From assembly GCA_977020255.1 (NCBI GenBank), contig CDROCS010000998.1, positions 186,001-250,000 of the forward strand: a stretch of 64,000 nt of DNA, read 5' to 3'. Positions 5,040-36,828 of the stretch are shown piece by piece; positions within the stretch are counted from its first letter, which is position 1, and each line of letters starts with the position of its first letter. A program made the position numbers and the translations under genes. The notes under the pieces are model-generated. The model did no database searches. It was not told the origin of the DNA and saw nothing but the letters and a program-made list of their open reading frames with translations. This DNA comes from Obrimoposthia wandeli. Lineage: Eukaryota.

Positions 5040-5179
5040 TAAATCATCTCTTAAGTCACCATTCTCCTAAACAGTCTATGAACACAATTTAGTCTGTGTA
5101 TGATTTTATCTTCGCTTCTTGATGCCCATTCAGATTTCAGACTTTATAACAAAAATCTGACATACCTTTCTTCATTACA

Positions 5180-6034
5180 TCAATTATATGAATACTTAGC
5201 TGATGCCTGTAAAACAGTCTTTATACATAATGCTTCATCCAACATCGGGACGCCAATCACTCGTTTCGGTTTCTTGTCGGTCGAAATAGGTAGCTCAACG
5301 GTGAGTAATGCTTGTTGGTTGTCAGCTTGAATTAACACATTCCCTGTTGGGTCGATGATTTGGCTACCGCCACAATAATGACCACTGATCGCTTGAGTCT
5401 CTTCGACCCCAACTCGATTACACGTTGCAACATACATCGCATTTTCGATTGCACGGGCACGACTTATCACTAAGCTTTGCTCACCACCAAAATTAGCGGG
5501 ATGTAATAGCACATCAACATCACGTTGCGCGTACAGTCGAATAATTTCAGTGAACCATAGGTCAAAGCAAACCGCGATACCGAAACACACCCCTTGGAAT
5601 TTAAACGTAACTAACTCGTCACCACGAGAGAAATACTGCTTATCGACATTAGTAAGCGCTAACTTTCTATAAACATCTTGCAAACCAGATTCATTAACAA
5701 CAACGACACTGTTATAAAATGCACCATGTCGTTTTTCTGCAATACCAGCAACCAAAGTAATGTGATACTTATTGGCAAGCGTAATCAAAGACGTAACCGT
5801 TTTTCCATCAATGCTTTCTGCTAATTGATGGATCTCGTCTGAGTGATCAAAAAGATAGCCCGTCGAAAAAAGCTCAGGCGCAACAACAAGCTCCCCTAAG
5901 CCACCACCAGGTTTACTCGTGGCATTATTTACAGCTTGGCTCATAAGCTGATCTAACAAAGCAATATTACCTGCCACATCTTTATGAATCACATCCATTT
6001 GAACCAAACTAATCTTCATTATTACCCTTAACAA
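5180..6034 (-). CDS. carbon-nitrogen hydrolase (nitrilase superfamily)
   Basis: Glu-Lys-Cys triad motifs APELF, YRKL, VCFDLWF; RARAIEN..YV..NRVG. Confidence 0.9.
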   Translation of the reverse strand: MLRVIMKISLVQMDVIHKDVAGNIALLDQLMSQAVNNATSKPGGGLGELVVAPELFSTGYLFDHSDEIHQLAESIDGKTVTSLITLANKYHITLVAGIAEKRHGAFYNSVVVVNESGLQDVYRKLALTNVDKQYFSRGDELVTFKFQGVCFGIAVCFDLWFTEIIRLYAQRDVDVLLHPANFGGEQSLVISRARAIENAMYVATCNRVGVEETQAISGHYCGGSQIIDPTGNVLIQADNQQALLTVELPISTDKKPKRVIGVPMLDEALCIKTVLQASAKYSYN

Positions 6035-6070
6035 TCAATTCATACGCCTTATATTCACGGTTCAGTTGTT

Positions 6071-6385
6071 CTAATTAGTCACCGCTTTGCCCGCTTTTTT
6101 TAATGCACCTTGATCTTTCTCGGGGGTTCCCATATCAACGGCTTTTCCTGCTACACCATCATCAGGCAATGCATTACCTACTGATTTTGTCGCCGTATCC
6201 TTTGCGGCTTCTGCTGGTGAACATCGCCCACTTACACCGATTGTCGCTTTAGCCGCTGTGCTCTTCATGGCTTTTTCTGGTGTACAGTCAGGATCTATTA
6301 CACCAGCCAGCACATTTCCCCCAATGCAAAAACTCGCCATAACTAAAAGGCTAAATATGCCAGTACTGTATCTGTTCATAAGCAT
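6071..6385 (-). CDS. small secreted hypothetical protein
   Basis: Signal peptide ending VLA, two Cys, Ala/Lys-rich mature part. Confidence 0.65.
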   Translation of the reverse strand: MLMNRYSTGIFSLLVMASFCIGGNVLAGVIDPDCTPEKAMKSTAAKATIGVSGRCSPAEAAKDTATKSVGNALPDDGVAGKAVDMGTPEKDQGALKKAGKAVTN

Positions 6386-6569
6386 TACCTGATTTTATGG
6401 ATTGAACTATAAAATCAGTGTAGCCAACATTTCGCAGCATTTAACAATAAAGGCACTCGTCACAAGCATCACGGTTATTTTCCACCAGCAAGATCAATGA
6501 AAGTGCCAGTTACATAAGATGAAGAATCGGATAGCAACCACTCAATAGCTTGAGCAACTTCTAACGCCG

Positions 6570-7256
6570 TTGCCGCACCAATACCACGCCCAGCACCAGT
6601 CACTAATACGGTTCTCTGAGTATCTAATGTTTTTTTCATCTATTATTTATTCCTTACAAAGCCGCTTAACTTTAACCATTACAAAACAATTAATACAACA
6701 AGTTACGATATTGCGCTATTTTTTGATAACATGCTCGGCATTATACAAGGAAGTGATAAACGCATTGGAAGCTAGCCGTAGAAATTTTAGTGAGAATAGT
6801 AGTAGGGTAAGTGCGCTTATCATATTGTCGATCGTGCTAAACGGCTTTCTATCATCCATTGTTGTGCTTAACCCAACCGCATTCTCTGGTAATAGTAATT
6901 GGTTAACGGCACCGCTGACTGAAAAGGTATTAATCTGTACAGCAGAAGGTCTGCGATGGATAGACCCAAGTATGTTACTGCAAAAGAATGCTCGACAACC
7001 AGCATTAGCCAGTGAAAAATCATCGCTCAATCACAATCAATACCAACACTACCAATTTCACTGCCCACTCTTAAAGCACCACCAGCCCGCAGAATTATTA
7101 GCGTATTTGAGTATATTCATCCTATTCGCAATGTTGGTTGTGGCGACGCTTCAGAGGCTCTCGCTTTGCCTCTTTTTCTGCTATGAAAAAATGTACCTTA
7201 CTTATGCCCCTAAACAGTCTCCGCCTTCTTCATTATCGCCACAAAAAATAAACTAA
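6570..7256 (+). CDS. DUF2946-like membrane protein (possible Cu-binding); true start uncertain, probably downstream
   Basis: TM, ICTAEG, His-rich HCP segment, C-terminal P.QSPP; lies just upstream of a PCu(A)C gene, the usual DUF2946 context. Confidence 0.55.
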   Translation: MPHQYHAQHQSLIRFSEYLMFFSSIIYSLQSRLTLTITKQLIQQVTILRYFLITCSALYKEVINALEASRRNFSENSSRVSALIILSIVLNGFLSSIVVLNPTAFSGNSNWLTAPLTEKVLICTAEGLRWIDPSMLLQKNARQPALASEKSSLNHNQYQHYQFHCPLLKHHQPAELLAYLSIFILFAMLVVATLQRLSLCLFFCYEKMYLTYAPKQSPPSSLSPQKIN

Positions 7257-7343
7257 AAAAATCAGCTAACAATTAGAAGAATATACCCACCCATGCACAA
7301 TGCAGCTTTAAAACAAACAACGAGGTGGAACATGGAGAAAGTT

Positions 7344-7838
7344 ATGAAAAAAAATACATTCATCACCCTGCTATTTAGTAGCGCACTATTTCTATCAAGC
7401 TTTGCAAATGCGCACGATTACAAAGCGGGCGACTTGCAAATTGACCACCCTTGGTCAAAAGCAGTACCCCCCAATTCATCGGTTGCTGCAGCCTTTTTCA
7501 ATGTCACGAATCATGGCAGCGAAAATGATGTATTGATCAGTGCTGAATCTCCGATTGCAGGTAAAGTAGAATTACATGCTCATATTCATGAAGACGGCAT
7601 GATGAAAATGCGTGAAGTTAAAGATATTAAAATCCCAGCAAATGATAGTACTTCACTAAAACCGGGGGCCAATCACATCATGTTTTTCAACCTTACTAAG
7701 GTGCCAAAACTAGGCGATCGCTTTCCACTGACACTGCACTTTAAAAACGCAGGGGAAATGACTATTGAAATTGCAGTTGAAAAAGCAACATATCAGATGG
7801 AAATGAAACCTGAAAAGACAAAAGAGCAGCACCATTAA
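7344..7838 (+). CDS. periplasmic copper chaperone PCu(A)C
   Basis: Signal peptide; H..GDL.I.HPWS; ELHAH..EDGMMKM and PGANHIM Cu motif. Start chosen from GGAG at 7334-7337 (track start 7293). Confidence 0.93.
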   Translation: MKKNTFITLLFSSALFLSSFANAHDYKAGDLQIDHPWSKAVPPNSSVAAAFFNVTNHGSENDVLISAESPIAGKVELHAHIHEDGMMKMREVKDIKIPANDSTSLKPGANHIMFFNLTKVPKLGDRFPLTLHFKNAGEMTIEIAVEKATYQMEMKPEKTKEQHH

Positions 7839-22760: not shown

Positions 22761-22853
22761 AGCTCGCCCCTTGGGAGCTCCTCTGGTCGCTCTGAATCAT
22801 GCATATTGAAGCGGTTTAAGTATATCTGGCTAGGGCTCAATATTGGAATTCAG

Positions 22854-24617
22854 ATGAAAAAATCTTCGGCTGCACAGGATGGTGGCCAGATCCCAGTAGC
22901 ATCATCTTTAAAACTGGCATTAACTGAGCTGGTAAAATTCTCACCCAGACGCGTCGCCGTGTTATTTATGCTAATGCTTTTTCAGGGGCTTACTGCGGGC
23001 GTTGGTTTATTGCTGTTCATCCCATTGCTCGGTGTACTGGATATCGGACTCGACAGTACAACAGGCATCAGTAAGTACTTTGTTCAAGCATTTGACTACC
23101 TGGGCATTGCGCCCAGCCTGTTGTTGATCTTAGTGAGTTATATCGTCGTCGTCTCTGCTGTCGCTTTTTGTCACTACCGAGTCTCGGTGCTTACAACCGC
23201 ACTGCAACAAAACTACATCTGCAATAAACGAAATCAGATTTATCGGGAACTGTTGGCCTGCCGCTGGCTATTTATTATTAACCGTCGTCAAGCAGAGTTA
23301 GTACATACACTCACCGTACAGGTACAACAGGCAGGCAATGCCTGTAGCCAAATGCTACAACTTCAGAGCCAGTTAACACTGGTCAGCGTTTATCTGCTAC
23401 TGGCCGTGATGCTGTCTTGGCAACTGACTGTGCTGACAATGGCTCTCGGACTACTGTTATTTGTGTTGCTCATCCCTACCAACCGACATGCGCTGGCATC
23501 CGGTAAAGCCCGGCAAAACGGATATAAGCAACTCTTCCATCAGATCAGTGAACAGCTTGATAATCTCAAAATCATTAAAAGTTTTGCCAGTGAACATCAG
23601 TTCTCAACATTGATGCTCAGCCACAGTCAGCAACTTGAACAGCAACAAACCCGGCTGGTTCAACTCAATGCCCGCACCAAACTGATTTATACCATCTCGG
23701 CGGTTGTTCTCTTCAGCCTGATTTTTTATCTATCACAACAATGGCTCGCGATCCCTGTCGCCACCTTACTCACCATGCTGTTGATATTTTCCCGGCTATT
23801 GCCGCAGATAGCGGCAATTCAAAGTAAGTTTCAGCAACTCTTACATCTCATACCAGCATTTGCAGACATCCAACAGCTCCAATATGACTGTCGCACTATG
23901 CAGGAAAATACCGAACCACAGCGCCCTGCAATAACCTTCGAAAAGCAGTTCCAACTGAAAAATATCAGTTTTCAGTACAGCTCGATGCAACCAAACGTGT
24001 TTAGCCAGTTATCGCTGAACATAAATAAAGGCGAAACCGTCGCGATTACAGGTCCTTCAGGGGTAGGAAAATCGACATTGGCAGACATCATCGCGGGCTT
24101 AATCACCCCGACTCAGGGGCAAATATACTGCGATGGAAAACCATTAACCGAACAGAATTTACTGAGCTGGCGACAATCGGTAGCTTATGTTACTCAGGAT
24201 ACATTACTGCTGAATGCCAGTATCAGAGAGAACCTGCGTTGGGTGAAACCACTGGCATCTGACCGCGAAATCTGGCTGGCACTTACTCAGGCGGCTGCCA
24301 CCGATTTTGTCCACCAGCAACCACAACAACTGGATACGGTGATCGGCGATAAAGGCATCCGTCTATCTGGCGGGGAACGACAGCGCCTGGCACTGGCTCG
24401 CGCCATCCTCAGTCAGCCACAACTGCTGATCCTCGATGAAGCCACCAGCGCGTTAGATCAGGCCAACGAAAACCACATTATTAATGTGTTACGTCAGTTA
24501 CAGGGGCAACTGACCATAGTGATCATTGCCCATAGCGAGCAAACCATCGTTCATGCGGATAAAAAGATAGTGCTATCGGATAACAATGCCAGCCCAATAG
24601 AGCTTACTTCGGCATAA
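22854..24617 (+). CDS. ABC transporter, fused permease/ATPase (lasso-peptide exporter D-like)
   Basis: 6 TM plus Walker A GPSGVGKST, LSGGERQR, ILDEATSALD. Track start 22806. Confidence 0.9.
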   Translation: MKKSSAAQDGGQIPVASSLKLALTELVKFSPRRVAVLFMLMLFQGLTAGVGLLLFIPLLGVLDIGLDSTTGISKYFVQAFDYLGIAPSLLLILVSYIVVVSAVAFCHYRVSVLTTALQQNYICNKRNQIYRELLACRWLFIINRRQAELVHTLTVQVQQAGNACSQMLQLQSQLTLVSVYLLLAVMLSWQLTVLTMALGLLLFVLLIPTNRHALASGKARQNGYKQLFHQISEQLDNLKIIKSFASEHQFSTLMLSHSQQLEQQQTRLVQLNARTKLIYTISAVVLFSLIFYLSQQWLAIPVATLLTMLLIFSRLLPQIAAIQSKFQQLLHLIPAFADIQQLQYDCRTMQENTEPQRPAITFEKQFQLKNISFQYSSMQPNVFSQLSLNINKGETVAITGPSGVGKSTLADIIAGLITPTQGQIYCDGKPLTEQNLLSWRQSVAYVTQDTLLLNASIRENLRWVKPLASDREIWLALTQAAATDFVHQQPQQLDTVIGDKGIRLSGGERQRLALARAILSQPQLLILDEATSALDQANENHIINVLRQLQGQLTIVIIAHSEQTIVHADKKIVLSDNNASPIELTSA

Positions 24618-24637: not shown

Positions 24638-25840
24638 TCACTTTTCAGTTGACGACGATTGTTGTTGCCTGTTGGTATTGCGGCTACCATCAACCAAAAC
24701 GTGACGTCTGAACAGTGCAAGAGGTTTGGCAAACGTGTATAGCCAGCAAAACCGAGCAGGCAGCATTGGCAAGAACTGTATATCGAAAGCATTGATCCGG
24801 AACTTGGTACGAAATGCCAGTAAACCCTCCCAAACAGAATCACTGACAAACACATCCGGCAGAGTCTTTAGCTGATCAACAAAACTACGCCTGGTCAGTG
24901 TCGTGAGTTCCAGCTTATGCATCGAACGTTTAACAAAAAATCGAACCATCGCATCCTGAAACAAACCAGTCGAAAGCGAAACCGGCACCTCACAACCATA
25001 CACCCGTTGGCATAAATTTAATGCCACCAACAACGCTCGCTGCTGTTTCAACTCCCTCGCTAAGATCATTAAATCTGACCAATTAATGTCATTATTTTTT
25101 ATAATCAGCGCAATATCAACCAGCCATTTCAAACGGTGAAACTGGGTATGGGCACCATGCCAGCACAGATAAATAATATAGAAATTCAGGTTTTCATCGG
25201 TAAAGCTTTGCAGGCTTCGGTGGCTCACCGCATAGCGGGACAGCTTAGAATTTGCTACCGTAAGCCGGGAGTGTAGCTCTAATATCGTCCCGTCTTTATG
25301 ACTAAAGGTGAAATCTTTAGTCGCCAATCGCAGCCGATCAATGAAATACGGCGGAAAATCATCAAGAACGCTGGATGTAAAGCCAATGTCAGCAAGCGCA
25401 ACTCTGGCCCGCTCATAATGTTCCGGCTTAACCAGCATATCTATATCATGACTGTGCCTTAATGCCAGATCACCATAAAGCTGCTGAGCCAACTCAAACC
25501 CTTTAAAACTATAGACATCAATACCTGCATTATTAAAAGCCTGTTTAATACGTGCAGAATGCATAAACTGTTGTCGGGTTAGCTTTATCTGACGACGCTG
25601 CTTTTGCTCCAGATAGCGCTGAAATGCTTCCGACAATCCGACTAAATCCAGTGCTTTTAAATGCCGATACACACAAGGCCAGACCCGGTGTTGTTCCAGC
25701 AAGGCTTTAAAGCGGTCTTCATCAATCCCTTGCTGAAATCGCAACCGCACCTCGTGCAGTTTAACCGCATCAATGGTCGGTAAACTCAGACAACACAGCA
25801 ACTGTAATTCCTGACTGATCGTTTCCTTGGATATATCCAT
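24638..25840 (-). CDS. nucleotidyltransferase family protein (NTP_transf_5 type)
   Basis: FKG..LAQQLYG.LALRHSHDIDMLV, ILELH, HGAH..RLKWLVDI. Confidence 0.88.
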   Translation of the reverse strand: MDISKETISQELQLLCCLSLPTIDAVKLHEVRLRFQQGIDEDRFKALLEQHRVWPCVYRHLKALDLVGLSEAFQRYLEQKQRRQIKLTRQQFMHSARIKQAFNNAGIDVYSFKGFELAQQLYGDLALRHSHDIDMLVKPEHYERARVALADIGFTSSVLDDFPPYFIDRLRLATKDFTFSHKDGTILELHSRLTVANSKLSRYAVSHRSLQSFTDENLNFYIIYLCWHGAHTQFHRLKWLVDIALIIKNNDINWSDLMILARELKQQRALLVALNLCQRVYGCEVPVSLSTGLFQDAMVRFFVKRSMHKLELTTLTRRSFVDQLKTLPDVFVSDSVWEGLLAFRTKFRINAFDIQFLPMLPARFCWLYTFAKPLALFRRHVLVDGSRNTNRQQQSSSTEK

Positions 25841-25988: not shown

Positions 25989-26465
25989 TTAATGTTGAGA
26001 CTCCATTAAAAGATAAACGTCAGCGTCGCCAATTTCACAAAAACCCAAACTTTGATAAAGCTTTAAAGCCGGGTTATTTTTTTCAACGTGGATACGCACA
26101 CATTTTCCCAAACTGGCTGCTTTTGCTAAAATATCAACCAGCAGATCTCTTCCTATCCCTTTATTACGATATTGAGGAAGGAGGACAATATCGATAATCC
26201 GAATTTCATCCTCTCTCAAATCTGTGTACAACCTTCCAATTTCCTCTTTTTCCCAGAGAATAATCTCATACTTTGCATCTTCAAATTGTTGTTGATAATA
26301 CTGATGCTGCATATCAAATTGCATCTGTAAAAACTGATCAATTTGTTCTTGAGGCCATCCTGTCATTGCAAGCTCTTCCAAACGCGTGCTCGCATACACT
26401 TTTAACAGAAATGGCAGATCCTCAGGAAGAAAAATAGGTCGAAATTGAATTTCTGGGTAAAGCAT
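25989..26465 (-). CDS. GNAT N-acetyltransferase
   Basis: IIDIVLLPQYRNKGIG acetyl-CoA motif, LHV-like IHVEKNNPALKLYQSLGF. Confidence 0.93.
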   Translation of the reverse strand: MLYPEIQFRPIFLPEDLPFLLKVYASTRLEELAMTGWPQEQIDQFLQMQFDMQHQYYQQQFEDAKYEIILWEKEEIGRLYTDLREDEIRIIDIVLLPQYRNKGIGRDLLVDILAKAASLGKCVRIHVEKNNPALKLYQSLGFCEIGDADVYLLMESQH

Positions 26466-26468
26466 AAC

Positions 26469-26990
26469 TTAAGACCTCGATGGATATGTGCCGTCCAAGG
26501 CGATACAGAAGTTGACGACTGTATATGGTTGGCTATTTTCATGAGACTGGCCTTGTCCCGTACTTTGAATCGTTTCTGAACTCATGGCTGCCGGGTTGGT
26601 TGCCCCCTTCTTATAAAGGTAATTATCTGCCATCTTGGAAAGATACTGCCCCGCTGGATTCGTTTCTGTTCCCCCTGCCTTCACTGCTGTTACAGTGTGA
26701 TTGTGTGAGGGGAGGTTTTGTTGACTGAGTGGAATCACAGGATATCCATCTATCTCGGCCAGAGTGCGATAAGTTAACCCTGGGCCCCTTCTAGGGTTCA
26801 TGGGGCTTCTTCCCTGCAAATTAGGAAGGGCCATCGTCGATCTTCCATCTCCCCCATAATAGTTTGAAATAACGCTGAACAAAATTGAGTGCTGGCTAAT
26901 GGAAAGTAATGCACCATCGCAAAAAGCCCAACCACGAGGCGCATAATCACAAGTAAACATTCGAATTTCACCGACATAAGGTTCGGCCAT
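26469..26990 (-). CDS. phage tail-collar domain protein (MdpB-like), copy 3
   Basis: PYVGEIRMF..APRGWAFCDG..YGGDG..LPNLQGR; LPSHNH; C-terminal HEN.QPY.VVNFCIAL.G.YPSR. Confidence 0.9.
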   Translation of the reverse strand: MAEPYVGEIRMFTCDYAPRGWAFCDGALLSISQHSILFSVISNYYGGDGRSTMALPNLQGRSPMNPRRGPGLTYRTLAEIDGYPVIPLSQQNLPSHNHTVTAVKAGGTETNPAGQYLSKMADNYLYKKGATNPAAMSSETIQSTGQGQSHENSQPYTVVNFCIALDGTYPSRS

Positions 26991-27000
26991 AATAATCTCC

Positions 27001-27540
27001 TTAAGTGCGAGAGGGATAATTCCCTTTCAAAGCAATGATAAAATTAACGCACAAGCTGGGCATTAAATTACCGTGCGCCTCATTTCCCCCTGTATTCAAC
27101 ACCGCTTGCGACACATCGTTATCGGCTAACTCCATATTTTTAGTTGAATCACTACTTTGGGGACCATAGGCATTTACACTCGGTGTTGCCAAAGCGTGTC
27201 CCACCGGAACAGTATTATCTGCCGCTGCACTCGATGCCATTAACCCATGAGTGTGGGCGGGAATTTGATCCTTCGAGAGCGTCGCTTGTTCATCTCCAAA
27301 GCGGGCTCCGATAGGACGGGACATAAGCCCAGGGCCGGTTCCGTAATGCATAGGAAGGCGCCCACGCAAGTCGGGAAGACCAAAGGTCGTTCTTCCATCT
27401 CCTCCATATAAAGTATTGAGTAGAGAGAAAAGGGATTGATTCTGGGAAACATTCAACAACTCGCCATCACAAAATGCCCAGTTTCTCGGGGCGAAATTTC
27501 CAGCAAACATGCGAATTTCGCCTATAAAGGGTTCGGTCAT
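27001..27540 (-). CDS. phage tail-collar domain protein (MdpB-like), copy 2
   Basis: PFIGEIRMFAGNFAPRNWAFCDG..LPDLRGR; IPAHTH; HGNLMP.LCVNFII. Confidence 0.92.
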   Translation of the reverse strand: MTEPFIGEIRMFAGNFAPRNWAFCDGELLNVSQNQSLFSLLNTLYGGDGRTTFGLPDLRGRLPMHYGTGPGLMSRPIGARFGDEQATLSKDQIPAHTHGLMASSAAADNTVPVGHALATPSVNAYGPQSSDSTKNMELADNDVSQAVLNTGGNEAHGNLMPSLCVNFIIALKGNYPSRT

Positions 27541-27549
27541 AAATACTCC

Positions 27550-28089
27550 TTAATTTCTTGGGGGGAATAGCCCCTCGGTTGCGATGATAAAATTAATTAC
27601 CTGAACAGGCTGCATGTTGTTGTGAGCAAGATTGCCCCCTGTGTTACTGATCGAGTCGCCTGCCATAGCAACCGAAGGGGTTTTATTATTATACAATGGG
27701 CGCAGTTCTCCCTGTGCATTTTCCACTTGTGTAGCGAGTAGAGGGACTTTCACTGGACTGTAAGCATCAGCGTTGTCTTGTGAAGCCATTAGGTTGTGAG
27801 TATGCTCTGGAAGCTCTGTTTGGCTCAGGGTAACCTCCTCCACTCCACCCTTATCTCCCATAGAATAATGCCACTGGTTAGCAAGAGCTCCTTGATGAAC
27901 TGGGACTCTTCCTTTCATGTCGGGGAGTGCAAAGGTTGAAATACCATCTCCACCATACTTGTTGCCGATAATGGCAAACAATGTTTGGTGTTGACTGATA
28001 GGGAGGATAGCCCCATCACACTGGGCCCAGCCACGAGGAGCAAAGTTAAAGCCCACCATCGTGATTTGGCCTATATAGGGTTCAGCCAT
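27550..28089 (-). CDS. phage tail-collar domain protein (MdpB-like), copy 1
   Basis: PYIGQITMVGFNFAPRGWAQCDG..LPDMKGR; LPEHTH; HNNMQP.QVINFII. Confidence 0.92.
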   Translation of the reverse strand: MAEPYIGQITMVGFNFAPRGWAQCDGAILPISQHQTLFAIIGNKYGGDGISTFALPDMKGRVPVHQGALANQWHYSMGDKGGVEEVTLSQTELPEHTHNLMASQDNADAYSPVKVPLLATQVENAQGELRPLYNNKTPSVAMAGDSISNTGGNLAHNNMQPVQVINFIIATEGLFPPRN

Positions 28090-28330
28090 ATTATATCTCC
28101 TTTATATTGACTATTAACAATAGTCACTTTAACTAATTAGTATCTATTTTAATTTTCAACGGGAGTTATTGGCATTATCAACAATAATACGCCTTAATTA
28201 ATAATAAATATCTTAACTCCATTTATTTGTAGTCTATTTAAAATAAATTACAATAAAACTAAAAACCTCAACGCTTTTCTTGTTATATTAATTAACAAAC
28301 AATCATACCTATTGGTTTAAACTCGACTTG

Positions 28331-28361
28331 TTACAGTTAATATGACCATTTATGTGATCAG
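28331..28361. repeat. 31-bp direct repeat, copy 1 (upstream of tail-collar operon)
   Basis: TTACAGTTAATATGACCATTTATGTGATCAG; 27/31 identical to 29011-29041. Confidence 0.75.
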
Positions 28362-28502
28362 ATAACACAATTTAATTATTTCGTTATGACGCAAATGTGG
28401 TAGCAGTCACAGTATTAACTGTATTTAAAATGATTCGGCTTAATCTTTATCAACTAAACTCGATATTTGTTACGTTTATGATATCACTCCAACTCTGGTT
28501 AA

Positions 28503-28814
28503 TTAATCCATTCGCTTATAGTTAATAATTGCTTCATATTTATAATGCTGCTCGTCTTCACCCACCGGGACGATAAACAAGGAAAATTGACTTTCTTTTT
28601 CCTTACTTTCCATCGACCAGTTTCCTTGCCTTAAGCGGAAATGATTCTTATTACCATGAAATAAAAGAGAAAAACTCTCAACATTGTTACCGAGGTTTTT
28701 TTTATCCGATACTTCCACTAGTCTTAGCGGTAAGGGGGGTTGTTCCGGGTCATAGCAGACGTCAAAAACCTCATTGTGGGCACTAACAAATTTTTTGTGA
28801 TTGAATTCTTTCAT
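28503..28814 (-). CDS. small hypothetical protein resembling DUF6916 family
   Basis: L.LVEV..ESFSLLFHG..L.QG..F.LFIVPVG..Y.YEAI.N pattern, typical of the small gene found beside tail-collar/GNAT cassettes. Family name from recall, not a search. Confidence 0.65.
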   Translation of the reverse strand: MKEFNHKKFVSAHNEVFDVCYDPEQPPLPLRLVEVSDKKNLGNNVESFSLLFHGNKNHFRLRQGNWSMESKEKESQFSLFIVPVGEDEQHYKYEAIINYKRMD

Positions 28815-29066: not shown

Positions 29067-29501
29067 TTATACCATATAGCGATCGATGACGTGATAGCAT
29101 GCGACGTCATTACCGCCAGTAAGATAAGCATCACCAAGCATCAACCAAGCATGGGCTTTATATTCGCTAGTTGTTTTGTTGACCCCGATATAAACAATGC
29201 CAGCCATTTTCCGCCTTCTCAGCATACTTTGGGCTGCCATCGCCTGCGCCAGGCATTTGCATTGCCATGGCAGGTATTTGGCAACAAGACGTACAGCCCG
29301 GCCTATCTGCTTCGCTTTCTGTGGGCACTGAACTAAGGGATCATCGTCATCCAAATTTTGCTGCCCTAGCATACGGGTTTGCACTGGGTAACGGGCAAAA
29401 AGAATAAGCAGCCGAGCTAGGGCCAACCAGCAACTTGCCTCAACGAGAATAAATCGCTGGTTGGAGCGGACGAGCTTGAAAAATAAGACTAAGTACCTCA
29501 T
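29067..29501 (-). CDS. lasso peptide leader peptidase B2 (transglutaminase-like)
   Basis: KCLAQAMA (Cys), .GV......AHAWL (His); overlaps B1 stop. Confidence 0.92.
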   Translation of the reverse strand: MRYLVLFFKLVRSNQRFILVEASCWLALARLLILFARYPVQTRMLGQQNLDDDDPLVQCPQKAKQIGRAVRLVAKYLPWQCKCLAQAMAAQSMLRRRKMAGIVYIGVNKTTSEYKAHAWLMLGDAYLTGGNDVACYHVIDRYMV

Positions 29502-29776
29502 TCGTTCAAGCTGATAAATTTTTTGGCTTGTAGTTGAGTTAAAAACGCAGCAATGTCGTTTTTACCTTGTTCGGGTGCAACGTCATACTCATCGAGTATT
29601 GTTTCGAATATATTTGACAGTTGGGATGGGTTTTCTAGCAATTGCCAAATCCGAGCACCGATGTTATCGAGTTTGAAATACTTTCCGGTTTGGGTACACA
29701 TTAACACTACCTCACCATCAAGCACGCAGCTCACTTGGTTGGGGCTACGCTCGATAATGCTTGTTTGACTGATCAT
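29498..29776 (-). CDS. PqqD-family RiPP recognition element (lasso B1)
   Basis: LDGEVVLM...GKYFKLDNIGARIWQLL..YDV..DI.AFL.QL. Confidence 0.93.
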   Translation of the reverse strand: MISQTSIIERSPNQVSCVLDGEVVLMCTQTGKYFKLDNIGARIWQLLENPSQLSNIFETILDEYDVAPEQGKNDIAAFLTQLQAKKFISLNE

Positions 29777-29794: not shown

Positions 29795-30655
29795 TTAGTC
29801 AATAACCTGATTATGGTCATCCAAGTAGCCAAATTGTCTCATGACCACCTGGTTGTGTTCTATGAAAAGGCTGACTTGCTGATCGCTCAGTTTTTCCCGC
29901 CAATCGCCGACAACACCACGGCGGAAAAAATGTTCTGCGCGCCCCGGCTTTTCATTAAAGCCATTAGCTTGCTCTTGGGCGACTAGCTTGCTAAAGCTCG
30001 TTTTATCTATAGCGCTTTGAATTTCCTGCTCACTGGCTTTAATTCCGGCAAAATGAAGCGCCTTGCCAAAGGTGTCTATAGGGGAAGCATGCATATCTTC
30101 ATAGCGAATAACACAGCAAGGCATATTGGGTGTTTGGGTCCAGCTCTGGACGTGCCCACTCCAGTCGAGCAGCCTCTGCTGTAACTGGGAAGCTTGCCTG
30201 TTTGGATGCGTACCAAAGCAATGATCTTTGTTCATCATCTGGTGCAGGGTTTTTTCAACATTGCCATGGCCGCTATGAAAAGCAAGGGATACACAGACAT
30301 CGAGCGGGTTGCGAATGATATAGATAGCACCGAGTGTCGCTTTGTTAGAAACCAGTGGTTCCCCTTGGTCAGTGTGGGTATAAGCATCGTGAATTTTGTG
30401 AAATCGAGGTTTATCGTACTGCCTGGCAGTGTGTTCATACACTCTAGGACGAAGTCGCTCAATTTCTTTCTCGGTCAGGTCGGCAGAATCATACCCGACT
30501 GCACTCTCAAACCAGTAGCGTGAGCTGGCTATTGAATGTGACTTTGGTGCGTTAATATTCAGTTCTGACTCTTTATTATCTAACGCATGTAAAAATAACC
30601 GGAACCAAGTGTTGCCAGATTTAGGGTATGAGGCCAGCCAGATAATTTTATTCAT
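29795..30655 (-). CDS. PAPS-dependent sulfotransferase
   Basis: IWLASYPKSGNTW (5'-PSB), IRNPLDVCVS (3'-PB), RYEDM, FFRRGVVGDW. Confidence 0.93.
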   Translation of the reverse strand: MNKIIWLASYPKSGNTWFRLFLHALDNKESELNINAPKSHSIASSRYWFESAVGYDSADLTEKEIERLRPRVYEHTARQYDKPRFHKIHDAYTHTDQGEPLVSNKATLGAIYIIRNPLDVCVSLAFHSGHGNVEKTLHQMMNKDHCFGTHPNRQASQLQQRLLDWSGHVQSWTQTPNMPCCVIRYEDMHASPIDTFGKALHFAGIKASEQEIQSAIDKTSFSKLVAQEQANGFNEKPGRAEHFFRRGVVGDWREKLSDQQVSLFIEHNQVVMRQFGYLDDHNQVID

Positions 30656-31572
30656 TGCACCGCCTCAGCCGCAACACAGGTGATCATCTCATCAAGATAA
30701 AATAGATTGTTACTTGGGCGTTTTAAATCAAAGGCAGTTATTTGCTGTACCAGCGCAATGCATTGTTTGAAATGCGTAATTTCCATACCATGACCAATAA
30801 TATATTGCTTGCGGTAGCTATGTGTTTTCAGGCATTCAATGATATCAGCCCCACGAAGCCGTGTGCATTGCACGGTGTCCCCGTTATAAGTACCGAGCTG
30901 GAACAGGTGGCTCAATGGCTTTGGTTCACGGCTAAATACAGGGTGGATAGGCATTTTTCGCTTAGATAATTCGGGTCTGATCCGTAACAGTGTCTCGGGG
31001 TCTTGGTTTAGTTGTTCCAGCGCGTCATGCCATAACTTGGTTTGCGGATAACCCGGATAAACCATTGCAAGGCCGTTGTTGTCGTTAGAAAACTTAATGA
31101 CGCAGAGATCGTCTCCGAGTAATTTGTATCCCCGTTGGCTGAAAGCCGTTGCCAAAGTCGATTTCCCCTGACCGGAATGGCCAACAAGGGTAATGCAATG
31201 GTCACCAACGTCGACCACACTGCCATGTAATACCAGCATGCCACGCTGTTGTAGCAAGGCCCCTAGCGCTGAACCGAGTAAAAAAAGACGGATGGAGTCG
31301 TGATCTGCCCCTGGGGCGGAGTCAATCAGGATCTCTTTACCGTCGCGAACTAAATAACGGGCAACATCATCGACAAGTAATAAAAATTCCCCAGGCTTGA
31401 CCTGATAACGAACACCGAAGGCTTTTGGGTTATCCAGCGTATCAGGGACTGGCGCAAAACGGATATTGACATCGGCCTCGCCGCTGAATTCGCCACTGAA
31501 AAGCTCGGGACATTCGAACTCAGAATCAATATTGAGTCCAAAGCAATAATAGGAATAGTGCTTATCGGTCAT
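30652..31572 (-). CDS. HPr-kinase-like kinase (paeninodin PadeK-type)
   Basis: LHGSVV (His), GHSGQGKSTLA P-loop, LLGDDL. Confidence 0.88.
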   Translation of the reverse strand: MTDKHYSYYCFGLNIDSEFECPELFSGEFSGEADVNIRFAPVPDTLDNPKAFGVRYQVKPGEFLLLVDDVARYLVRDGKEILIDSAPGADHDSIRLFLLGSALGALLQQRGMLVLHGSVVDVGDHCITLVGHSGQGKSTLATAFSQRGYKLLGDDLCVIKFSNDNNGLAMVYPGYPQTKLWHDALEQLNQDPETLLRIRPELSKRKMPIHPVFSREPKPLSHLFQLGTYNGDTVQCTRLRGADIIECLKTHSYRKQYIIGHGMEITHFKQCIALVQQITAFDLKRPSNNLFYLDEMITCVAAEAVQ

Positions 31573-31796
31573 GATCTTTTGTTATCTGTATGATATTAAG
31601 GTTAATAAATGTAACATTGGTCGTTGGTTATGCCAATAGTTTCTATTAAACTACGTGCACTATGTTGCTTTTGTTATACGGCTAGACCATATAACAACGT
31701 TAACTGGTGGACGAATTGAAACTTCACGCTTTGGCTTGATTAGGCTGATTACCTTGCTTGGCGGGCGATTGTTGATTGACTGTTAAGGGATTATAT

Positions 31797-33743
31797 ATGA
31801 GTGGAATCGGCGGTATCGTATTACCAGCAAGGCAAAAAATTGAATTGCAAGAATTGCAGCGAATGTCCAATGCATTGCGTCCTTATGGTCCTGACCGGCA
31901 ACAGGCCTTATTACGACCTGGTGTTGGCTTTCTTCATTGCCTTATGCGCATTACTCCGGAAGATTTTTTTGAGTATCAGCCTCTGGCGTCACCTTCTGGC
32001 ATTTTGTTATGCGCAGATGCCCGTATTGATAATCGTCAGGAATTAGCGGACAAGCTGTCCATTCATGCTTCTCAGCTGAAAACCTTACCTGATAGTCAGC
32101 TTATCATTAAGGCTTACGAGCAATGGGGAGAATCATGCCCTGAGCATCTACTGGGTGATTTTGCCTTTGCGATCTGGGATCCCCGTGAACAAAAGTTGTT
32201 TATGGCCCGGGACCATTTCGGTGTTCGTTCTCTTTATTACTCCCATAAAGGCGATTTTTTTGCCTTTGCCAATGATATGAAAGCGCTATTGGCTCTGCCG
32301 CAAATCAGTGACACGCTAGATCCGCAAAAGCTGGCCGAGTTTGCCGTGTTGATGCATGGCGACACTCATGCCTGTTTCTATCAAGATATCCGTAGGCTTC
32401 CTCCTGCCCATAGCTTGACCTTGGTGAACAACCAAGTTCGGCTTCATCGTTATTACAGGCTTGAAGAAAATGTGCGCGATATTCACTTTTCTAACGATAA
32501 GGAATATGGCGAGGCCTTAAAAGAGCAACTCAACCAAGCTGTTAAGTGTCGGCTGCGCAGCGCCTATCCAATCGGCAGCGAGCTGAGCGGAGGGTTAGAT
32601 TCTACCAGTGTAGCGGGTCTGGCGGCCATTGAACTGGCGAAACAAGGCACAACATTGAATACCTTTACCGCCGTTCCGCCGGTTAGGTATCAGGGTGCAA
32701 AGCGTCGGGGGTGGGATCTTGATGAGCGCCCTTATATTCAAGCCTTTGGTGATATGCATAATAATGTTAATACTCACTTGCTAGAGGTCGATCCTGCTGG
32801 GAAAAACCTCTTTTCATTACTGGACGATACATATCGTCGTCAGGGTTTTCCCAACCGTAATGTCACCTCGACGTGGCTGAATGAGTTGGGCCATATGGCG
32901 GCGGATAAAGGGATAAGGGTAATGCTTAATGGCGGAATGGGAAATTTGACCATTAGTTGGACAGGCCAGTGCCTTTACAGTGAGCTGTTGCAACAAGGAC
33001 GCTGGTTAACTTGGCTAAAGTCGGTAAATCAGGCGAGGCAAACGAAAAATACCTCGCTCAAATCCTTACTGGCAACTTCGTTAGTACCTTTTATTCCCGA
33101 TTCTCTATGGGGCCGTTATCGCCGCCTGCGAGATGGCTATCAACAACCGTGGGTACGATATTCGCTGCTCAATCCAGAAATGGCCAAGCAACAAAATATC
33201 GACACGCGTTTCGATGAGTTAAACTGGGATCCCTATTATCGTCGGCAGGTCAAAGGCCGTGATAGCCGGATCATTCAGCTTGAAAAAAGAAACTGTTTTG
33301 ATGCCCGTGACCAAAATAGTGCTAGGCGCTCACTTGTTGGTGTCGAACGCAGAGATCCTACCCGCGATAAACGGCTGGTTGAATTTTGTTTTGGCATTGA
33401 AGAAGCTGTTTATTGTCAAGGCGGCCAACAGCGGGCATTAATTCGACAAGCAATGCAGGGGGTTGTGCCGGAGGCAATACTGCAACGTCAAACCCGCGGA
33501 ATGCAACCGCCGAGTTATTCAAATCATTTTCATGAGTCACCTTCGCTACTTTGGCAACAATTCGCGCAACTAAAACAATCTGACTCAGCGAGTCAGTATT
33601 TGGATTTACCAAGAATGGAAACAATGTTGCGTCGTGCTTTGGAGGGAAAAGCAGCAGCGTCTGAGTCGGCTATGCTGAAGATGACCCTGGAGCGAGCCTA
33701 TTCTGTTGGGGGCTTTATCTGCCACAATGAAAGTAAAAATTAG
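31797..33743 (+). CDS. lasso peptide cyclase C (asparagine-synthetase-like isopeptide synthase)
   Basis: Starts MSGIGG (Ser where AsnB has catalytic Cys); LSGGLDS ATP motif; ERRDP..DKRLVEFC. Track start 31776. Confidence 0.9.
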   Translation: MSGIGGIVLPARQKIELQELQRMSNALRPYGPDRQQALLRPGVGFLHCLMRITPEDFFEYQPLASPSGILLCADARIDNRQELADKLSIHASQLKTLPDSQLIIKAYEQWGESCPEHLLGDFAFAIWDPREQKLFMARDHFGVRSLYYSHKGDFFAFANDMKALLALPQISDTLDPQKLAEFAVLMHGDTHACFYQDIRRLPPAHSLTLVNNQVRLHRYYRLEENVRDIHFSNDKEYGEALKEQLNQAVKCRLRSAYPIGSELSGGLDSTSVAGLAAIELAKQGTTLNTFTAVPPVRYQGAKRRGWDLDERPYIQAFGDMHNNVNTHLLEVDPAGKNLFSLLDDTYRRQGFPNRNVTSTWLNELGHMAADKGIRVMLNGGMGNLTISWTGQCLYSELLQQGRWLTWLKSVNQARQTKNTSLKSLLATSLVPFIPDSLWGRYRRLRDGYQQPWVRYSLLNPEMAKQQNIDTRFDELNWDPYYRRQVKGRDSRIIQLEKRNCFDARDQNSARRSLVGVERRDPTRDKRLVEFCFGIEEAVYCQGGQQRALIRQAMQGVVPEAILQRQTRGMQPPSYSNHFHESPSLLWQQFAQLKQSDSASQYLDLPRMETMLRRALEGKAAASESAMLKMTLERAYSVGGFICHNESKN

Positions 33744-33890
33744 TAAGTAAAATAAATGGTTTGCCCTGTTGTAAATAGCGAGAATCAATCTACACAAATG
33801 CATTTATACAGGGCGAGCCAACAGCAAGAGGGTTCAAAATGTAAGTTCACCCTACTACTTAAGAGTAAACTTATTTACGGGGTCTGTTAC

Positions 33891-34013
33891 CTAGGAACTC
33901 ATTGAAGAGGAATCAGCACCTGGACCAGCATTGCTCTTTGTCTCAAGTTCCAGCATTTCTTGTAGTTCGGGCTTTATCCAAGCTTGCTTTGTCTGTTGTT
34001 GTACTTTGTCCAT
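33891..34013 (-). CDS. lasso peptide precursor A, 40 aa: MDKVQQQTKQAWIKPELQEMLELETK-SNAGPGADSSSMSS
   Basis: Hand-translated; GAGG RBS; WxxPxL leader box; Thr at -2; core Ser1 with Asp8; C-terminal Ser. Not in the ORF track. Confidence 0.9.
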   Translation of the reverse strand: MDKVQQQTKQAWIKPELQEMLELETKSNAGPGADSSSMSS

Positions 34014-34181
34014 TTTTATACCTCGTTGGTTTAGTTAATATGGTCAATAAGCCATAACAAATAATTTAAAATTAAAACATACCACTAGCTATTGTCTTGT
34101 TGCTTCTTTGTTGTGTCAATGTTGTTTTGTGGTGCTATGTCCTGCTTTTTAATAATTATTTTGCTATGATTTTCATTCTTT

Positions 34182-35192
34182 ATGACAGGATGTCGTGTTA
34201 TGCCGCTTGATACACCCAATTCTCTTCCCGTTACTGCCGTTCCCGATGCCAAAGTCTCTATACGTGATGTATTTGGCATCGACAGCGACATGCAGGTGAT
34301 GGGGTTTACCCAACCTTGTGCCGGTGTGCCTGCCAAAATTGAGGGGTATGCTTTTGATCGGGAAACGACACTGGCCGTTCTCGCGGCTTTTAGCCATAAC
34401 CGCCGGGTCATGTTGCAAGGGCTGCACGGCACAGGAAAATCATCGCATATTGAGCAAGTGGCCGCACGACTGAACTGGCCCTGCCTTCGGGTAAACCTCG
34501 ACAGCAATATCAGCCGGTTGGACTTAATCGGTCGTGATGCCATCGTAGTAGAAAACGGCCAACAAATAACCGCCTTTCAAGAAGGGATACTGCCCTGGGC
34601 GATGCAGCGCCCGACCGCATTGATTTTCGATGAATATGACGCCGGCCGCCCAGATGTGATGTTCGTCTTGCAGCGCCTGCTGGAAAACGAAGGCCAGCTA
34701 ACGCTGCTAGAACAAAATAGGGTGATCGACTCTCATCCCTATTTTCGGTTATTTGCTACCGCCAATACCATCGGACTTGGCGATACCACAGGCCTGTACC
34801 ATGGTACCCAGCAATTGAATCAGGCGCAGATGGACCGCTGGCACATTGTTAGTACCCTCAACTTTCTGCCTTTTAAGCAGGAATTAGGGATCCTCGAAAA
34901 CCAGTTATCAAACATTACGCCAGAACAACAAGCCGTATTGGGCAATATGGTGGCAATGGCACAACTAACCCGAGAAGGCTTTAAACATGGTGATATCTCT
35001 ACATTGATGTCGTTGCGTACCCTGTTGGCCTGGGCCGAGAACTATCAGATTTTTGGTGATCTGGAGCTGGCTTTTAAATTTTCCTTTCTCAATCGCTGCG
35101 ACGAAGAGGAACGGGTGATCATCGGTGAATATTACCAACGCAGTTTTGATTACCCATTGCCAGAGCCAAGCGGAGCGCTGACTTTTGCTTAA
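34182..35192 (+). CDS. cobS: CobS-like AAA+ ATPase
   Basis: GLHGTGKSSHIEQVAARLNWPCLRVNLD, DEYDAGRPDVMFV, LYHGTQQLNQAQMDRW. Confidence 0.92.
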   Translation: MTGCRVMPLDTPNSLPVTAVPDAKVSIRDVFGIDSDMQVMGFTQPCAGVPAKIEGYAFDRETTLAVLAAFSHNRRVMLQGLHGTGKSSHIEQVAARLNWPCLRVNLDSNISRLDLIGRDAIVVENGQQITAFQEGILPWAMQRPTALIFDEYDAGRPDVMFVLQRLLENEGQLTLLEQNRVIDSHPYFRLFATANTIGLGDTTGLYHGTQQLNQAQMDRWHIVSTLNFLPFKQELGILENQLSNITPEQQAVLGNMVAMAQLTREGFKHGDISTLMSLRTLLAWAENYQIFGDLELAFKFSFLNRCDEEERVIIGEYYQRSFDYPLPEPSGALTFA

Positions 35193-36828
35193 ATCAACCA
35201 AGGTTACGGCAGAAAACGAGTCAACGACCAAACAACTGGCGAGTCTTACCGCTAGCAGGCGGGCGCTGGCAGGAAGTTGCAACCTTGACAGCAACGATCT
35301 GCTAACGCGACTACTAGGATCAGCGCTACCCTTACCATCCCTGACCTTGCACCGTGCGACAGCCGATATGGCCGGATTATGGCAGCGCCATCATGATCTC
35401 TTGATTGCCCAACAGCTAAAGCAGCGTTTGGGAGATCACCAGAGCCTATTGTGGATCGAGTGGCTGCGCATTGAAGCTTTGGGGGCACGGCAGCTCAATG
35501 GATTACGGGCCAATACCGCTGTCTTATTTGATTTTTTACTGGTTCAGCAAGCAGGTGGGGATATTGGCCGCCTGCTGGAACTGTTATTACCGTTACGCCG
35601 TAGCCTTAATAACTTAACTTGCGGTCTTGTGACGGCAGATGTGAATGTGGACATTGTTTTCACTGTGAATGAAAGCGAATGCTTGAATCAACTCATCAAT
35701 GATCAATCGGCTTTTGCAGAAGCGGCTTTCATCGCGCTGAATTTTGATAGCTCAGGAGTAAGTGATAGCAATATATCTGCCATCACCCAATCGGCAGAAA
35801 ACCCCGAGCAAGATCCTTTCTCGGAAGAAGAAAATAACGAGCCACAAGCTGATCCCGATATTGAATATGATGAGCAGGCTATCGAAGCGGCCTCGCAACC
35901 TATACCTGAAATTAATCACGCGTTCTCTAGTGATTATCGGATCTTCAGCACCCATTACGATCGCCAAATTGATGCGAACGAATATGCCCAGCAGCAGGGG
36001 CTGAGCTATTCTGAAACGCAGGATGAATATCGTCAATTAGTTAGCCGACTGGCCAATCGTTTGCAACGTCGTATTCAAGCGCTACAGCGACGTCAGTGGG
36101 AGCATGATCTCGACGATGGGCGACTTGATCCCGGCCGCCTGGCACGTGTGGTTGTCTCCCCACTGTCGGCCAGACCCTATAAAAAAGAACGAGAATCGCT
36201 ATTTAAAGAAACCGTGATCACTTTGCTGGTGGATAATTCCGGCTCGATGAAAGGGGAATCGAGCCACATCGCTTATCAGAGTTGCAGTATTATCGCTCAG
36301 TCACTGGAACGCTGCGGGATCAAAGTTGAAGTATTAGGTTTTACCACCGCACAACATAATCAACCGTTACTAGACTGGCAGGCCGCAGGCAGGCCAGAAT
36401 TACCCGGGCGGTTAAATGCGCTAAGACATATTGTTTACAAAACAGCAGACTGTAAATTCCGGCGAGCTCGTGGCGGTTTATCATTGATGCTCAATGAATC
36501 GTGGTTACAGGAAAACATCGATGGTGAGGCCCTGTTATGGGCTTATCAGCGATTGCTGGCAAGGCGTGAACCGAGGCGGATCCTGCTAACAATATCAGAT
36601 GGCAAGCCAATGGATCAGCCGACTCTCCAAGAGAATGATCAGCGCATGCTTGAGCAGCACCTGCATCAAGTGATCAAGGGGATAGAACAAGACGACCGGG
36701 TAGAATTGGCGGCCATCGGCATCGGTCATGATGTTGCGCGATATTACGCTAATGCAATAACAATTTATAACACCAGAGAATTGGGAGAGGTGTTACTAAA
36801 ACAGCTGGAGCAGCTTTTTCTTCGTTAA
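35185..36828 (+). CDS. cobT: CobT-like VWA-domain protein
   Basis: Acidic linker; G.LDPGRLAR, LLVDNSGSM (MIDAS), VEVLGFTT, ENIDGEAL.WA, ISDGKPMD, AIGIGHDV.RYY. Confidence 0.88.
   Translation: MLKSTKVTAENESTTKQLASLTASRRALAGSCNLDSNDLLTRLLGSALPLPSLTLHRATADMAGLWQRHHDLLIAQQLKQRLGDHQSLLWIEWLRIEALGARQLNGLRANTAVLFDFLLVQQAGGDIGRLLELLLPLRRSLNNLTCGLVTADVNVDIVFTVNESECLNQLINDQSAFAEAAFIALNFDSSGVSDSNISAITQSAENPEQDPFSEEENNEPQADPDIEYDEQAIEAASQPIPEINHAFSSDYRIFSTHYDRQIDANEYAQQQGLSYSETQDEYRQLVSRLANRLQRRIQALQRRQWEHDLDDGRLDPGRLARVVVSPLSARPYKKERESLFKETVITLLVDNSGSMKGESSHIAYQSCSIIAQSLERCGIKVEVLGFTTAQHNQPLLDWQAAGRPELPGRLNALRHIVYKTADCKFRRARGGLSLMLNESWLQENIDGEALLWAYQRLLARREPRRILLTISDGKPMDQPTLQENDQRMLEQHLHQVIKGIEQDDRVELAAIGIGHDVARYYANAITIYNTRELGEVLLKQLEQLFLR

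What the first reader, a model, noticed from the sequence alone, without database searches (positions are those of the whole stretch)
33891..34013. Unannotated minimal lasso precursor with a 14-residue core
Seen: leader with WIKPEL and T(-2)K; core SNAGPGADSSSMSS gives a Ser1-Asp8 ring and a tail of only 6 residues whose single bulky side chain is Met. It contains AGPG, as in the paeninodin N-terminus. Known: lassos need steric plugs to stay threaded. Inference: among the shortest lasso cores; phosphate, sulfate or sugar groups on the tail Ser may act as the plug, a possible new stabilisation principle.
Basis: partly seen in the sequence, partly recalled or inferred. Interest (0 to 1): 0.85.

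Follow-up and report, generated by a model that had tools for sequence, protein, structure and literature searches.

The report
Short lasso peptide precursor gene
This 40-codon gene is a genuine precursor of a small knotted ("lasso") peptide from a known phosphorylated class; its short 14-residue core is normal for that family, and the idea that an added chemical group holds the knot was published as a speculation in 2019.

Summary
Window 33891-34013 (-) encodes a 40-aa peptide: a leader with WIKPEL and Thr at -2, then the core SNAGPGADSSSMSS, whose only acidic residue is Asp8.

It is not a chance ORF.
- A profile built without it finds it as the single hit among 1353 six-frame segments (E 3.9e-11; next best 0.44).
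- It is 100% identical in a relative whose flanks are 92-94% identical.
- Orthologues beside the same cyclase keep the 40-codon length, the leader, Asp8 and the final Ser.

The gene belongs to a complete paeninodin-like cluster: HprK-like kinase, sulfotransferase, B1, B2, cyclase, PsmN-like nucleotidyltransferase and ABC exporter.

- Short cores are the family norm. Of 143 library representatives, 126 end in Ser, and core lengths peak at 13-17 aa; 14 representatives have 13 aa.
- Huascopeptin, a characterised lasso, also has 13 aa.
- The "modification as plug" idea was published for pseudomycoidin (Zyubko 2019, "third strategy") and could not be tested here.
- In its favour, 28 of 70 short-tail relatives have no F/W/Y/H/R/K in the tail, and the terminal Ser is the only constant tail feature.

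Verdict: a new member of a known kind, of moderate interest as a test case.

The parts
33891..34013 (-). Precursor gene A: 26-aa leader (WxxPxL motif, Thr at -2) plus 14-aa core SNAGPGADSSSMSS, then the stop codon
34091..34119 (-). Promoter-like site (TTGACA-17-GACAAT) about 78 nt upstream of the precursor ATG. This is a consensus match only.
33745..33814 (-). Hairpin followed by a U-rich tract after the precursor stop; a likely terminator
31776..33743 (+). Lasso cyclase C (asparagine-synthase-like). The true start is probably the ATG at 31797.
   Evidence: the relative's product is 648 aa
30652..31572 (-). HprK-like kinase K. H116, K137, D154 and D155 are invariant in 36 homologues.
   Evidence: the His-Lys-Asp-Asp motif is cited
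29795..30655 (-). Sulfotransferase (Sulfotransfer_1); its start overlaps the kinase stop by 4 nt
   Evidence: adjacent to K in 70 of 87 loci
29498..29776 (-). B1, the PqqD-like leader-binding protein
29067..29501 (-). B2, the transglutaminase-like leader peptidase
24638..25840 (-). PsmN-like nucleotidyltransferase (NTP_transf_5)
22806..24617 (+). ABC exporter (D-like); 46% identical to the transporter of the Photobacterium kasasachensis cluster

Best explanation
The ORF is the precursor (A) of a class II lasso peptide of the paeninodin-like, C-terminally phosphorylated type.

Shown from sequence and comparison:
- a conserved 40-codon gene beside the cyclase;
- a leader with the B1-recognition motif WxxPxL and Thr at -2;
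- a core with one acidic residue (Asp8) and a C-terminal Ser;
- an intact set of K, sulfotransferase, B1, B2, C, N and D genes.

Inferred by analogy with paeninodin, ThcoK/SyanK and pseudomycoidin:
1. B1 binds the leader.
2. The HprK-like kinase phosphorylates the side chain of the last Ser (core Ser14) on the linear precursor, perhaps several times.
3. The PsmN-like enzyme may add hexose to that phosphate.
4. The PAPS-type sulfotransferase adds sulfate to an unknown hydroxyl. The tail has four more Ser residues.
5. B2 cuts after Lys26.
6. C joins the Ser1 amine to the Asp8 side chain, giving an 8-residue ring with a 6-residue tail.
7. The ABC transporter exports the product.

Whether the tail stays threaded, and by what means, is open.
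For: ORF, motifs and uniqueness.

Purifying selection: the gene is 123/123 nt identical to L001 although the flanks are 92-94% identical. Against L003 and L004 the differences fall mostly on third codon positions (23 versus 13/13 and 15/11), and length and stop are kept.

Orthologous small ORFs lie beside the cyclase in Photobacterium kasasachensis, in BD1-7 clade genomes and in metagenome contigs.

Family: 35 of 36 distinct precursors found in 87 kinase loci end in Ser, against a background of 9.4%. The library search gave 267 representatives, and 126 of 143 short ones end in Ser.

Enzymes. Kinase catalytic residues are invariant.

Published biochemistry: the kinase acts on the C-terminal Ser of the linear precursor, the [Y/W]xxPx[L/V/I/F/A] motif is bound by the discrete leader-binding protein (RRE, here B1), and PsmN adds hexose.
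Against: There is no expression or product evidence. The one metatranscriptome run that held part of the stretch covered the neighbouring CobS-like gene, not the precursor.

The role of the sulfotransferase is unknown in any lasso system.

The exporter lies about 9 kb away on the other strand, with a tail-collar/GNAT cassette in between.

The tail has no classical bulky lock residue, so the product may not be a stable lasso.
Confidence: 0.8

Rival explanations
1. PTM-locked lasso. The phosphate, polyphosphate, hexose or sulfate on the C-terminal Ser is installed before ring closure. It then serves as the lower steric lock directly under the 8-residue ring, with Met12 or the short loop above.
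For: The kinase acts on the linear precursor before cyclisation. Unmodified pseudomycoidin is unthreaded, and a bulky L21F change restores threading; the authors propose the modification as a lock. In this family the only invariant tail feature is the terminal Ser. Tails are short, peaking at 5-8 residues after the acceptor. 28 of 70 short-tail cores have no F/W/Y/H/R/K in the tail.
Against: Nothing here tests threading. 42 of the 70 do carry an aromatic or basic tail residue, and only 3 lack every medium-to-large side chain, so Met/Leu/Gln-type residues might suffice. Paeninodin is a phosphorylated lasso whose phosphate lies far from the ring; that detail is my own recollection.
Confidence: 0.3
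2. The mature product is a branched-cyclic (unthreaded) or only transiently threaded peptide. The phosphate, sugar and sulfate groups serve activity, solubility, export or self-protection rather than topology.
For: Wild-type pseudomycoidin purified without K/N is a branched cycle. The tail SSSMSS has no classical lock residue. Lys acetylation of other lasso peptides serves self-resistance.
Against: The complete B1/B2/C machinery is conserved across phyla with these short cores. Pre-folding by C normally yields threaded products.
Confidence: 0.3
3. A chance ORF or a dead remnant: the small ORF is not translated, or the cluster is inactive.
For: No transcript evidence was obtained.
Against: Profile E 3.9e-11 and a unique hit. 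The gene is identical in a diverged relative. Orthologues are syntenic. All cluster genes are full length compared with their homologues.
Confidence: 0.03

Closest known systems
Paeninodin (Paenibacillus dendritiformis) and the ThcoA/SyanA precursors with HprK-like kinases
   Same: A split B1/B2, the cyclase C, an HprK-like kinase with the His-Lys-Asp-Asp motif, a C-terminal Ser on the precursor, and a sulfotransferase and nucleotidyltransferase in some clusters.
   Different: The paeninodin core has 23 aa with an Ala1-Asp9 ring and a 14-residue tail (sequence recalled; its mass is consistent). Here the core has 14 aa, a Ser1-Asp8 ring and a 6-residue tail. The gene order differs, and a tail-collar/GNAT cassette is embedded.
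Pseudomycoidin (Bacillus pseudomycoides)
   Same: The kinase plus the PsmN-type nucleotidyltransferase modify the C-terminal Ser with phosphate and then hexose. The tail lacks an effective bulky lock, and the modification was proposed as the lock.
   Different: Its core is longer (residue numbers up to His23 are quoted) with an Ala1-Asp9 ring. No sulfotransferase role is described. The host is a Firmicute.
Huascopeptin and chaxapeptin (shortest characterised class II lassos)
   Same: Very short cores: 13 and 15 aa against 14 here.
   Different: Both are actinobacterial, unmodified and locked by ordinary side chains. Huascopeptin has a Gly1-Asp7 ring.
Kinase/sulfotransferase lasso clusters of Geobacter, Pelobacter and Desulfobacca noted in 2014
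   Same: An HPr-kinase-like gene and a sulfotransferase lie next to lasso genes, with their role called unclear. The same kinase-sulfotransferase pair is adjacent in 70 of 87 loci here.
   Different: In that survey, precursors could mostly not be assigned. Here the precursor family is defined, and the host is a relative of Photobacterium.

Membership tests
Lasso peptide precursor (class II) | Leader motif [Y/W]xxPx[L/V/I/F/A] bound by the B1/RRE protein | tested here: met
   W12-I-K-P15-E-L17. W and P are invariant in 20 aligned relatives. The motif is as quoted.
Lasso peptide precursor (class II) | Thr at the penultimate leader position | tested here: met
   T25 is invariant in alignment A2.
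Lasso peptide precursor (class II) | Asp or Glu at core position 7-9 as ring acceptor | tested here: met
   Asp8 is the only acidic residue of the core. Of 70 short-tail relatives, 52 have the acceptor at position 8 and 18 at position 9.
Lasso peptide precursor (class II) | Adjacent B1, B2 and C genes | tested here: met
   PqqD, Transglut_core3 and Asn_synthase; NCBIfam lasso B2 model above its cutoff; best NCBIfam matches of C and B1 are the lasso cyclase and lasso PqqD chaperone models, both below their cutoffs.
Lasso peptide precursor (class II) | A macrolactam product with a threaded tail | not testable with these tools
   This needs MS, carboxypeptidase digestion, ion mobility or NMR.
Paeninodin-like phosphorylated lasso peptides | HprK-like kinase in the cluster with the catalytic His-Lys-Asp-Asp motif | tested here: met
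   Hpr_kinase_C hit. H116, K137, D154 and D155 are invariant in 36 sequences. The motif is as quoted.
Paeninodin-like phosphorylated lasso peptides | C-terminal Ser on the precursor | tested here: met
   The core ends in Ser. 35 of 36 and 126 of 143 relatives end in Ser.
Paeninodin-like phosphorylated lasso peptides | Accessory nucleotidyltransferase (PsmN-like) and ABC exporter | tested here: met
   NTP_transf_5 at 24638-25840 and the ABC transporter at 22806-24617.
Paeninodin-like phosphorylated lasso peptides | Phosphate observed on the terminal Ser | not testable with these tools
   This needs MS of the expressed product.

The most novel reading that the evidence does not exclude
In a widespread family of 13-15-residue lassos, including this one, the enzymatically added phosphate, sugar or sulfate on the last Ser is the only lower lock of the thread. 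The knot would then be held by a removable modification and could be released by a phosphatase. That would be a third, switchable way of stabilising lasso peptides.
Probability: 0.25. Interest if true: 0.6.

Novelty: new member of a known kind. Interest (0 to 1): 0.35.

Why it matters
The gene is a well-supported precursor assignment for a cluster type in which precursors were long hard to assign. It also sits in a large, uncharacterised set of very short, Ser-terminated lasso cores found across many phyla.

Its tail has no aromatic or basic residue, and the cluster holds a kinase, a nucleotidyltransferase and a sulfotransferase together. That makes it a compact, convenient substrate for two experiments:
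- testing the 2019 proposal that a C-terminal modification can lock a lasso;
- finding out what the lasso-associated sulfotransferase does.

It does not establish a new principle by itself.

Tried and rejected
- A genome-contig scan with the single kinase sequence found nothing. The scan with the alignment worked.
- A word-index search with the 40-aa precursor returned only itself. The exhaustive profile search was needed.
- Expression: of 18 runs, one metatranscriptome held part of the stretch. Its contigs lie on the CobS-like gene, and only a 38-nt piece with unlike flanks touches the 5' end of the precursor gene. This gives no evidence either way.
- The Zhu 2016 JBC paper could not be read, and the FEBS Letters paper is not held. 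SyanA could therefore not be compared.
- I tested whether sulfotransferase-bearing clusters have more Ser/Thr in the tail. The means were 0.25 and 0.09, one-sided p = 0.049, with only 7 precursors from clusters lacking the gene and no correction for relatedness. I treat this as inconclusive.
- AGPG as a sign of homology to paeninodin is rejected: the register differs, and the motif is absent from the nearest relatives.
- A second precursor in the window was sought and none was found.

Full report
**What is there.** The minus strand of 33891-34013 encodes a 40-aa peptide. Its leader carries W12-I-K-P15-E-L17 and ends in Thr25-Lys26. The remaining 14 residues are SNAGPGADSSSMSS. Asp8 is the only acidic residue of the core, so a Ser1-Asp8 ring of eight residues with a six-residue tail is the only canonical lasso reading.

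The gene has three plausible expression signals:
- GAGG lies 7 nt before the ATG (read).
- A TTGACA-17-GACAAT site lies about 78 nt upstream.
- A hairpin followed by a U-tract lies after the stop.

**Surroundings.** The ORF sits 148 nt from the convergent end of an asparagine-synthase-like lasso cyclase (31776-33743). Divergent from the cyclase runs a long minus-strand gene row:
- an HprK-like kinase (30652-31572);
- a sulfotransferase whose start overlaps the kinase stop by 4 nt (29795-30655);
- a PqqD-like B1 (29498-29776);
- a transglutaminase-like B2 (29067-29501);
- DUF6916, three tail-collar-domain genes and a GNAT;
- a PsmN-like NTP_transf_5 gene (24638-25840).

An ABC transporter converges on this row at 22806-24617. 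On the other side of the precursor lie CobS-like and CobT-like genes. Every component of a paeninodin-type cluster is present and full length.

**Is the ORF real?**
- A profile of 19 relatives, built without the window's sequence, finds it at E 3.9e-11 among 1353 six-frame segments of the window. The next best scores E 0.44, and a motif regex hits only this ORF.
- In metagenome contig L001 the kinase is 94% identical and the flanks of the ORF are 92-94% identical, yet the 123-nt gene is identical.
- In L003 and in Photobacterium kasasachensis (L004) the orthologue keeps exactly 40 codons and the same stop position. Differences are concentrated on third codon positions.
- Their cores are SGGGVGGDISGSAS and SGGGVGADASGEAS. 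The leader, Asp8 and the last Ser are kept while the rest of the core varies.
- BD1-7 clade genomes have a 41-aa version ending in GTSSTS.

**The family.** The kinase has 1387 homologues in the word-index search. I fetched 80 loci with an alignment of 36 of them.
- The sulfotransferase lies directly after the kinase in 70 of 87 loci. B1, B2 and C are detectable in about 60.
- An iterated profile over all six-frame segments of these loci found 36 distinct precursors. Of these, 35 end in Ser, against 9.4% of background segments.
- An exhaustive profile search of 1.84 billion representatives gave 267 hits at E <= 0.001.
- Of 143 short hits among the 150 listed, 126 end in Ser.
- The core length distribution is 13 aa (14 hits), 14 (22), 15 (24), 16 (31) and 17 (22).
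- The first core residue is most often Ser (45) or Gly (39).

The window's 14-residue, Ser1, Ser-terminated core is therefore typical of its family, not an outlier.

**How it most likely works.** Published work on paeninodin, ThcoK/SyanK and pseudomycoidin shows four things, as summarised:
- Its activity depends on a His-Lys-Asp-Asp motif.
- PsmN adds one or two hexoses to that phosphate.
- Discrete B1 proteins bind [Y/W]xxPx[L/V/I/F/A].

Here the corresponding features are present. H116, K137, D154 and D155 are invariant in 36 kinases, and the leader and the terminal Ser fit. I therefore infer, but did not show, this order of events:
1. B1 binds the leader.
2. The kinase phosphorylates Ser14 of the core.
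3. Hexose may be added to the phosphate, and sulfate to an unknown hydroxyl.
4. B2 cuts after Lys26.
5. C closes the Ser1-Asp8 ring.
6. The ABC transporter exports the product.

The sulfotransferase carries what I recognise from memory as PAPS-binding motifs (PKSGNTW near the N-terminus and RRGVVGDW near the C-terminus). Its acceptor is unknown in any lasso system.

**The plug idea.** The idea is not new. Zyubko et al. (2019) reported the following:
- Pseudomycoidin made without the kinase and PsmN is a branched cycle.
- An L21F change restores threading.
- They proposed that the bulky C-terminal phosphate-hexose "may serve as a lock", "an additional, third strategy".

I found no later test of this in the searchable library, which omits most subscription journals.

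The family data give some support but do not decide:
- The terminal Ser is the only constant tail feature.
- Tails are short, at 5, 6, 7 and 8 residues after the acceptor in 18, 26, 26 and 24 cores.
- 28 of 70 short-tail cores have no F/W/Y/H/R/K in the tail.
- Only 3 of the 70 lack every medium or large side chain.

A product that unthreads, or that is held by Met12-type residues, remains equally possible.

**Comparison and novelty.** The closest known systems are paeninodin and pseudomycoidin. They share the enzyme set, the terminal Ser and the kinase. They differ in core length (23 aa or more against 14), ring size (9 against 8), gene order and host.

Kinase plus sulfotransferase next to lasso genes was already noted in 2014 for Geobacter, Pelobacter and Desulfobacca, with precursors mostly unassigned. 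Among characterised lassos, huascopeptin (13 aa) is shorter.

This is a new member of a known kind. The short-core subfamily is uncharacterised experimentally, as far as I could find.

**Limits.**
- There is no expression or product evidence. The only RNA run holding part of the stretch covers the CobS-like gene.
- The two primary Zhu 2016 kinase papers could not be read, so their content is taken from reviews.
- The paeninodin sequence is recalled and checked only by mass.
- The link between the sulfotransferase and Ser/Thr-rich tails is weak (p = 0.049, uncorrected).

**Earlier notes of this scan.** My gene calls agree with those headlines.

Noticed in passing
window 34182-36828; L005/L006 5079-7737; L008 about 5087-7740: The CobS-like AAA+ and CobT-like VWA pair travels with this lasso cluster in two arrangements. 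It lies next to the precursor in the window and L001. It lies between the cyclase and the kinase in three BD1-7 clade genomes (CobS 77-78% identical). It is absent from the Photobacterium kasasachensis cluster, which has the nucleotidyltransferase and ABC genes at that position instead.
   Followed up: partly
window 25989-28814; L004 9173-13728; L003 5955-6770: A DUF6916, three tail-collar-domain genes and a GNAT are embedded in the minus-strand gene row between B2 and the PsmN-like gene. The same cassette follows B2 in L003 and L004, and is duplicated in L004. Weaker Collar/GNAT homologues also lie in kinase-sulfotransferase lasso loci of distant phyla (L016, L048, L063, L073).
   Followed up: partly
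L087 8001-9251; L088 4010-5221; L089 2107-3318 (proteins P0122, P0125): ORFs of 403-416 aa lie directly after PqqD-B2-cyclase genes in at least six metagenome contigs. Each holds 5-6 tandem cassettes made of a lasso-leader-like stretch (TWVPPAxTxLPISATA), a core-like stretch with Asp near position 8, and a Pro-rich spacer. This looks like a multi-cassette lasso precursor. No kinase is present there, and I found no description in the searchable papers.
   Followed up: partly
L068 1019-1585; L053 12648-13935: Some kinase-sulfotransferase loci carry 3-5 tandem precursor genes. Those of L068 have Tyr- and acid-rich cores (for example YYYEDEYCYPYS) that resemble tyrosine-sulfation sites. This hints that the sulfotransferase acceptor may differ between clusters.
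   Followed up: no
window 31776-31797: The mechanical ORF of the cyclase starts at a TTG. The family model aligns from residue 8, and the close relative's product is 648 aa. The real start is therefore probably the ATG at 31797, which leaves a 224-nt divergent promoter region towards the kinase.
   Followed up: partly
window 34179-34556: Contigs of a marine-sediment metatranscriptome run (X12) lie on the CobS-like gene at 90-98% likeness. This suggests that a relative's copy of this gene is present in an RNA library. DNA carry-over cannot be excluded.
   Followed up: no
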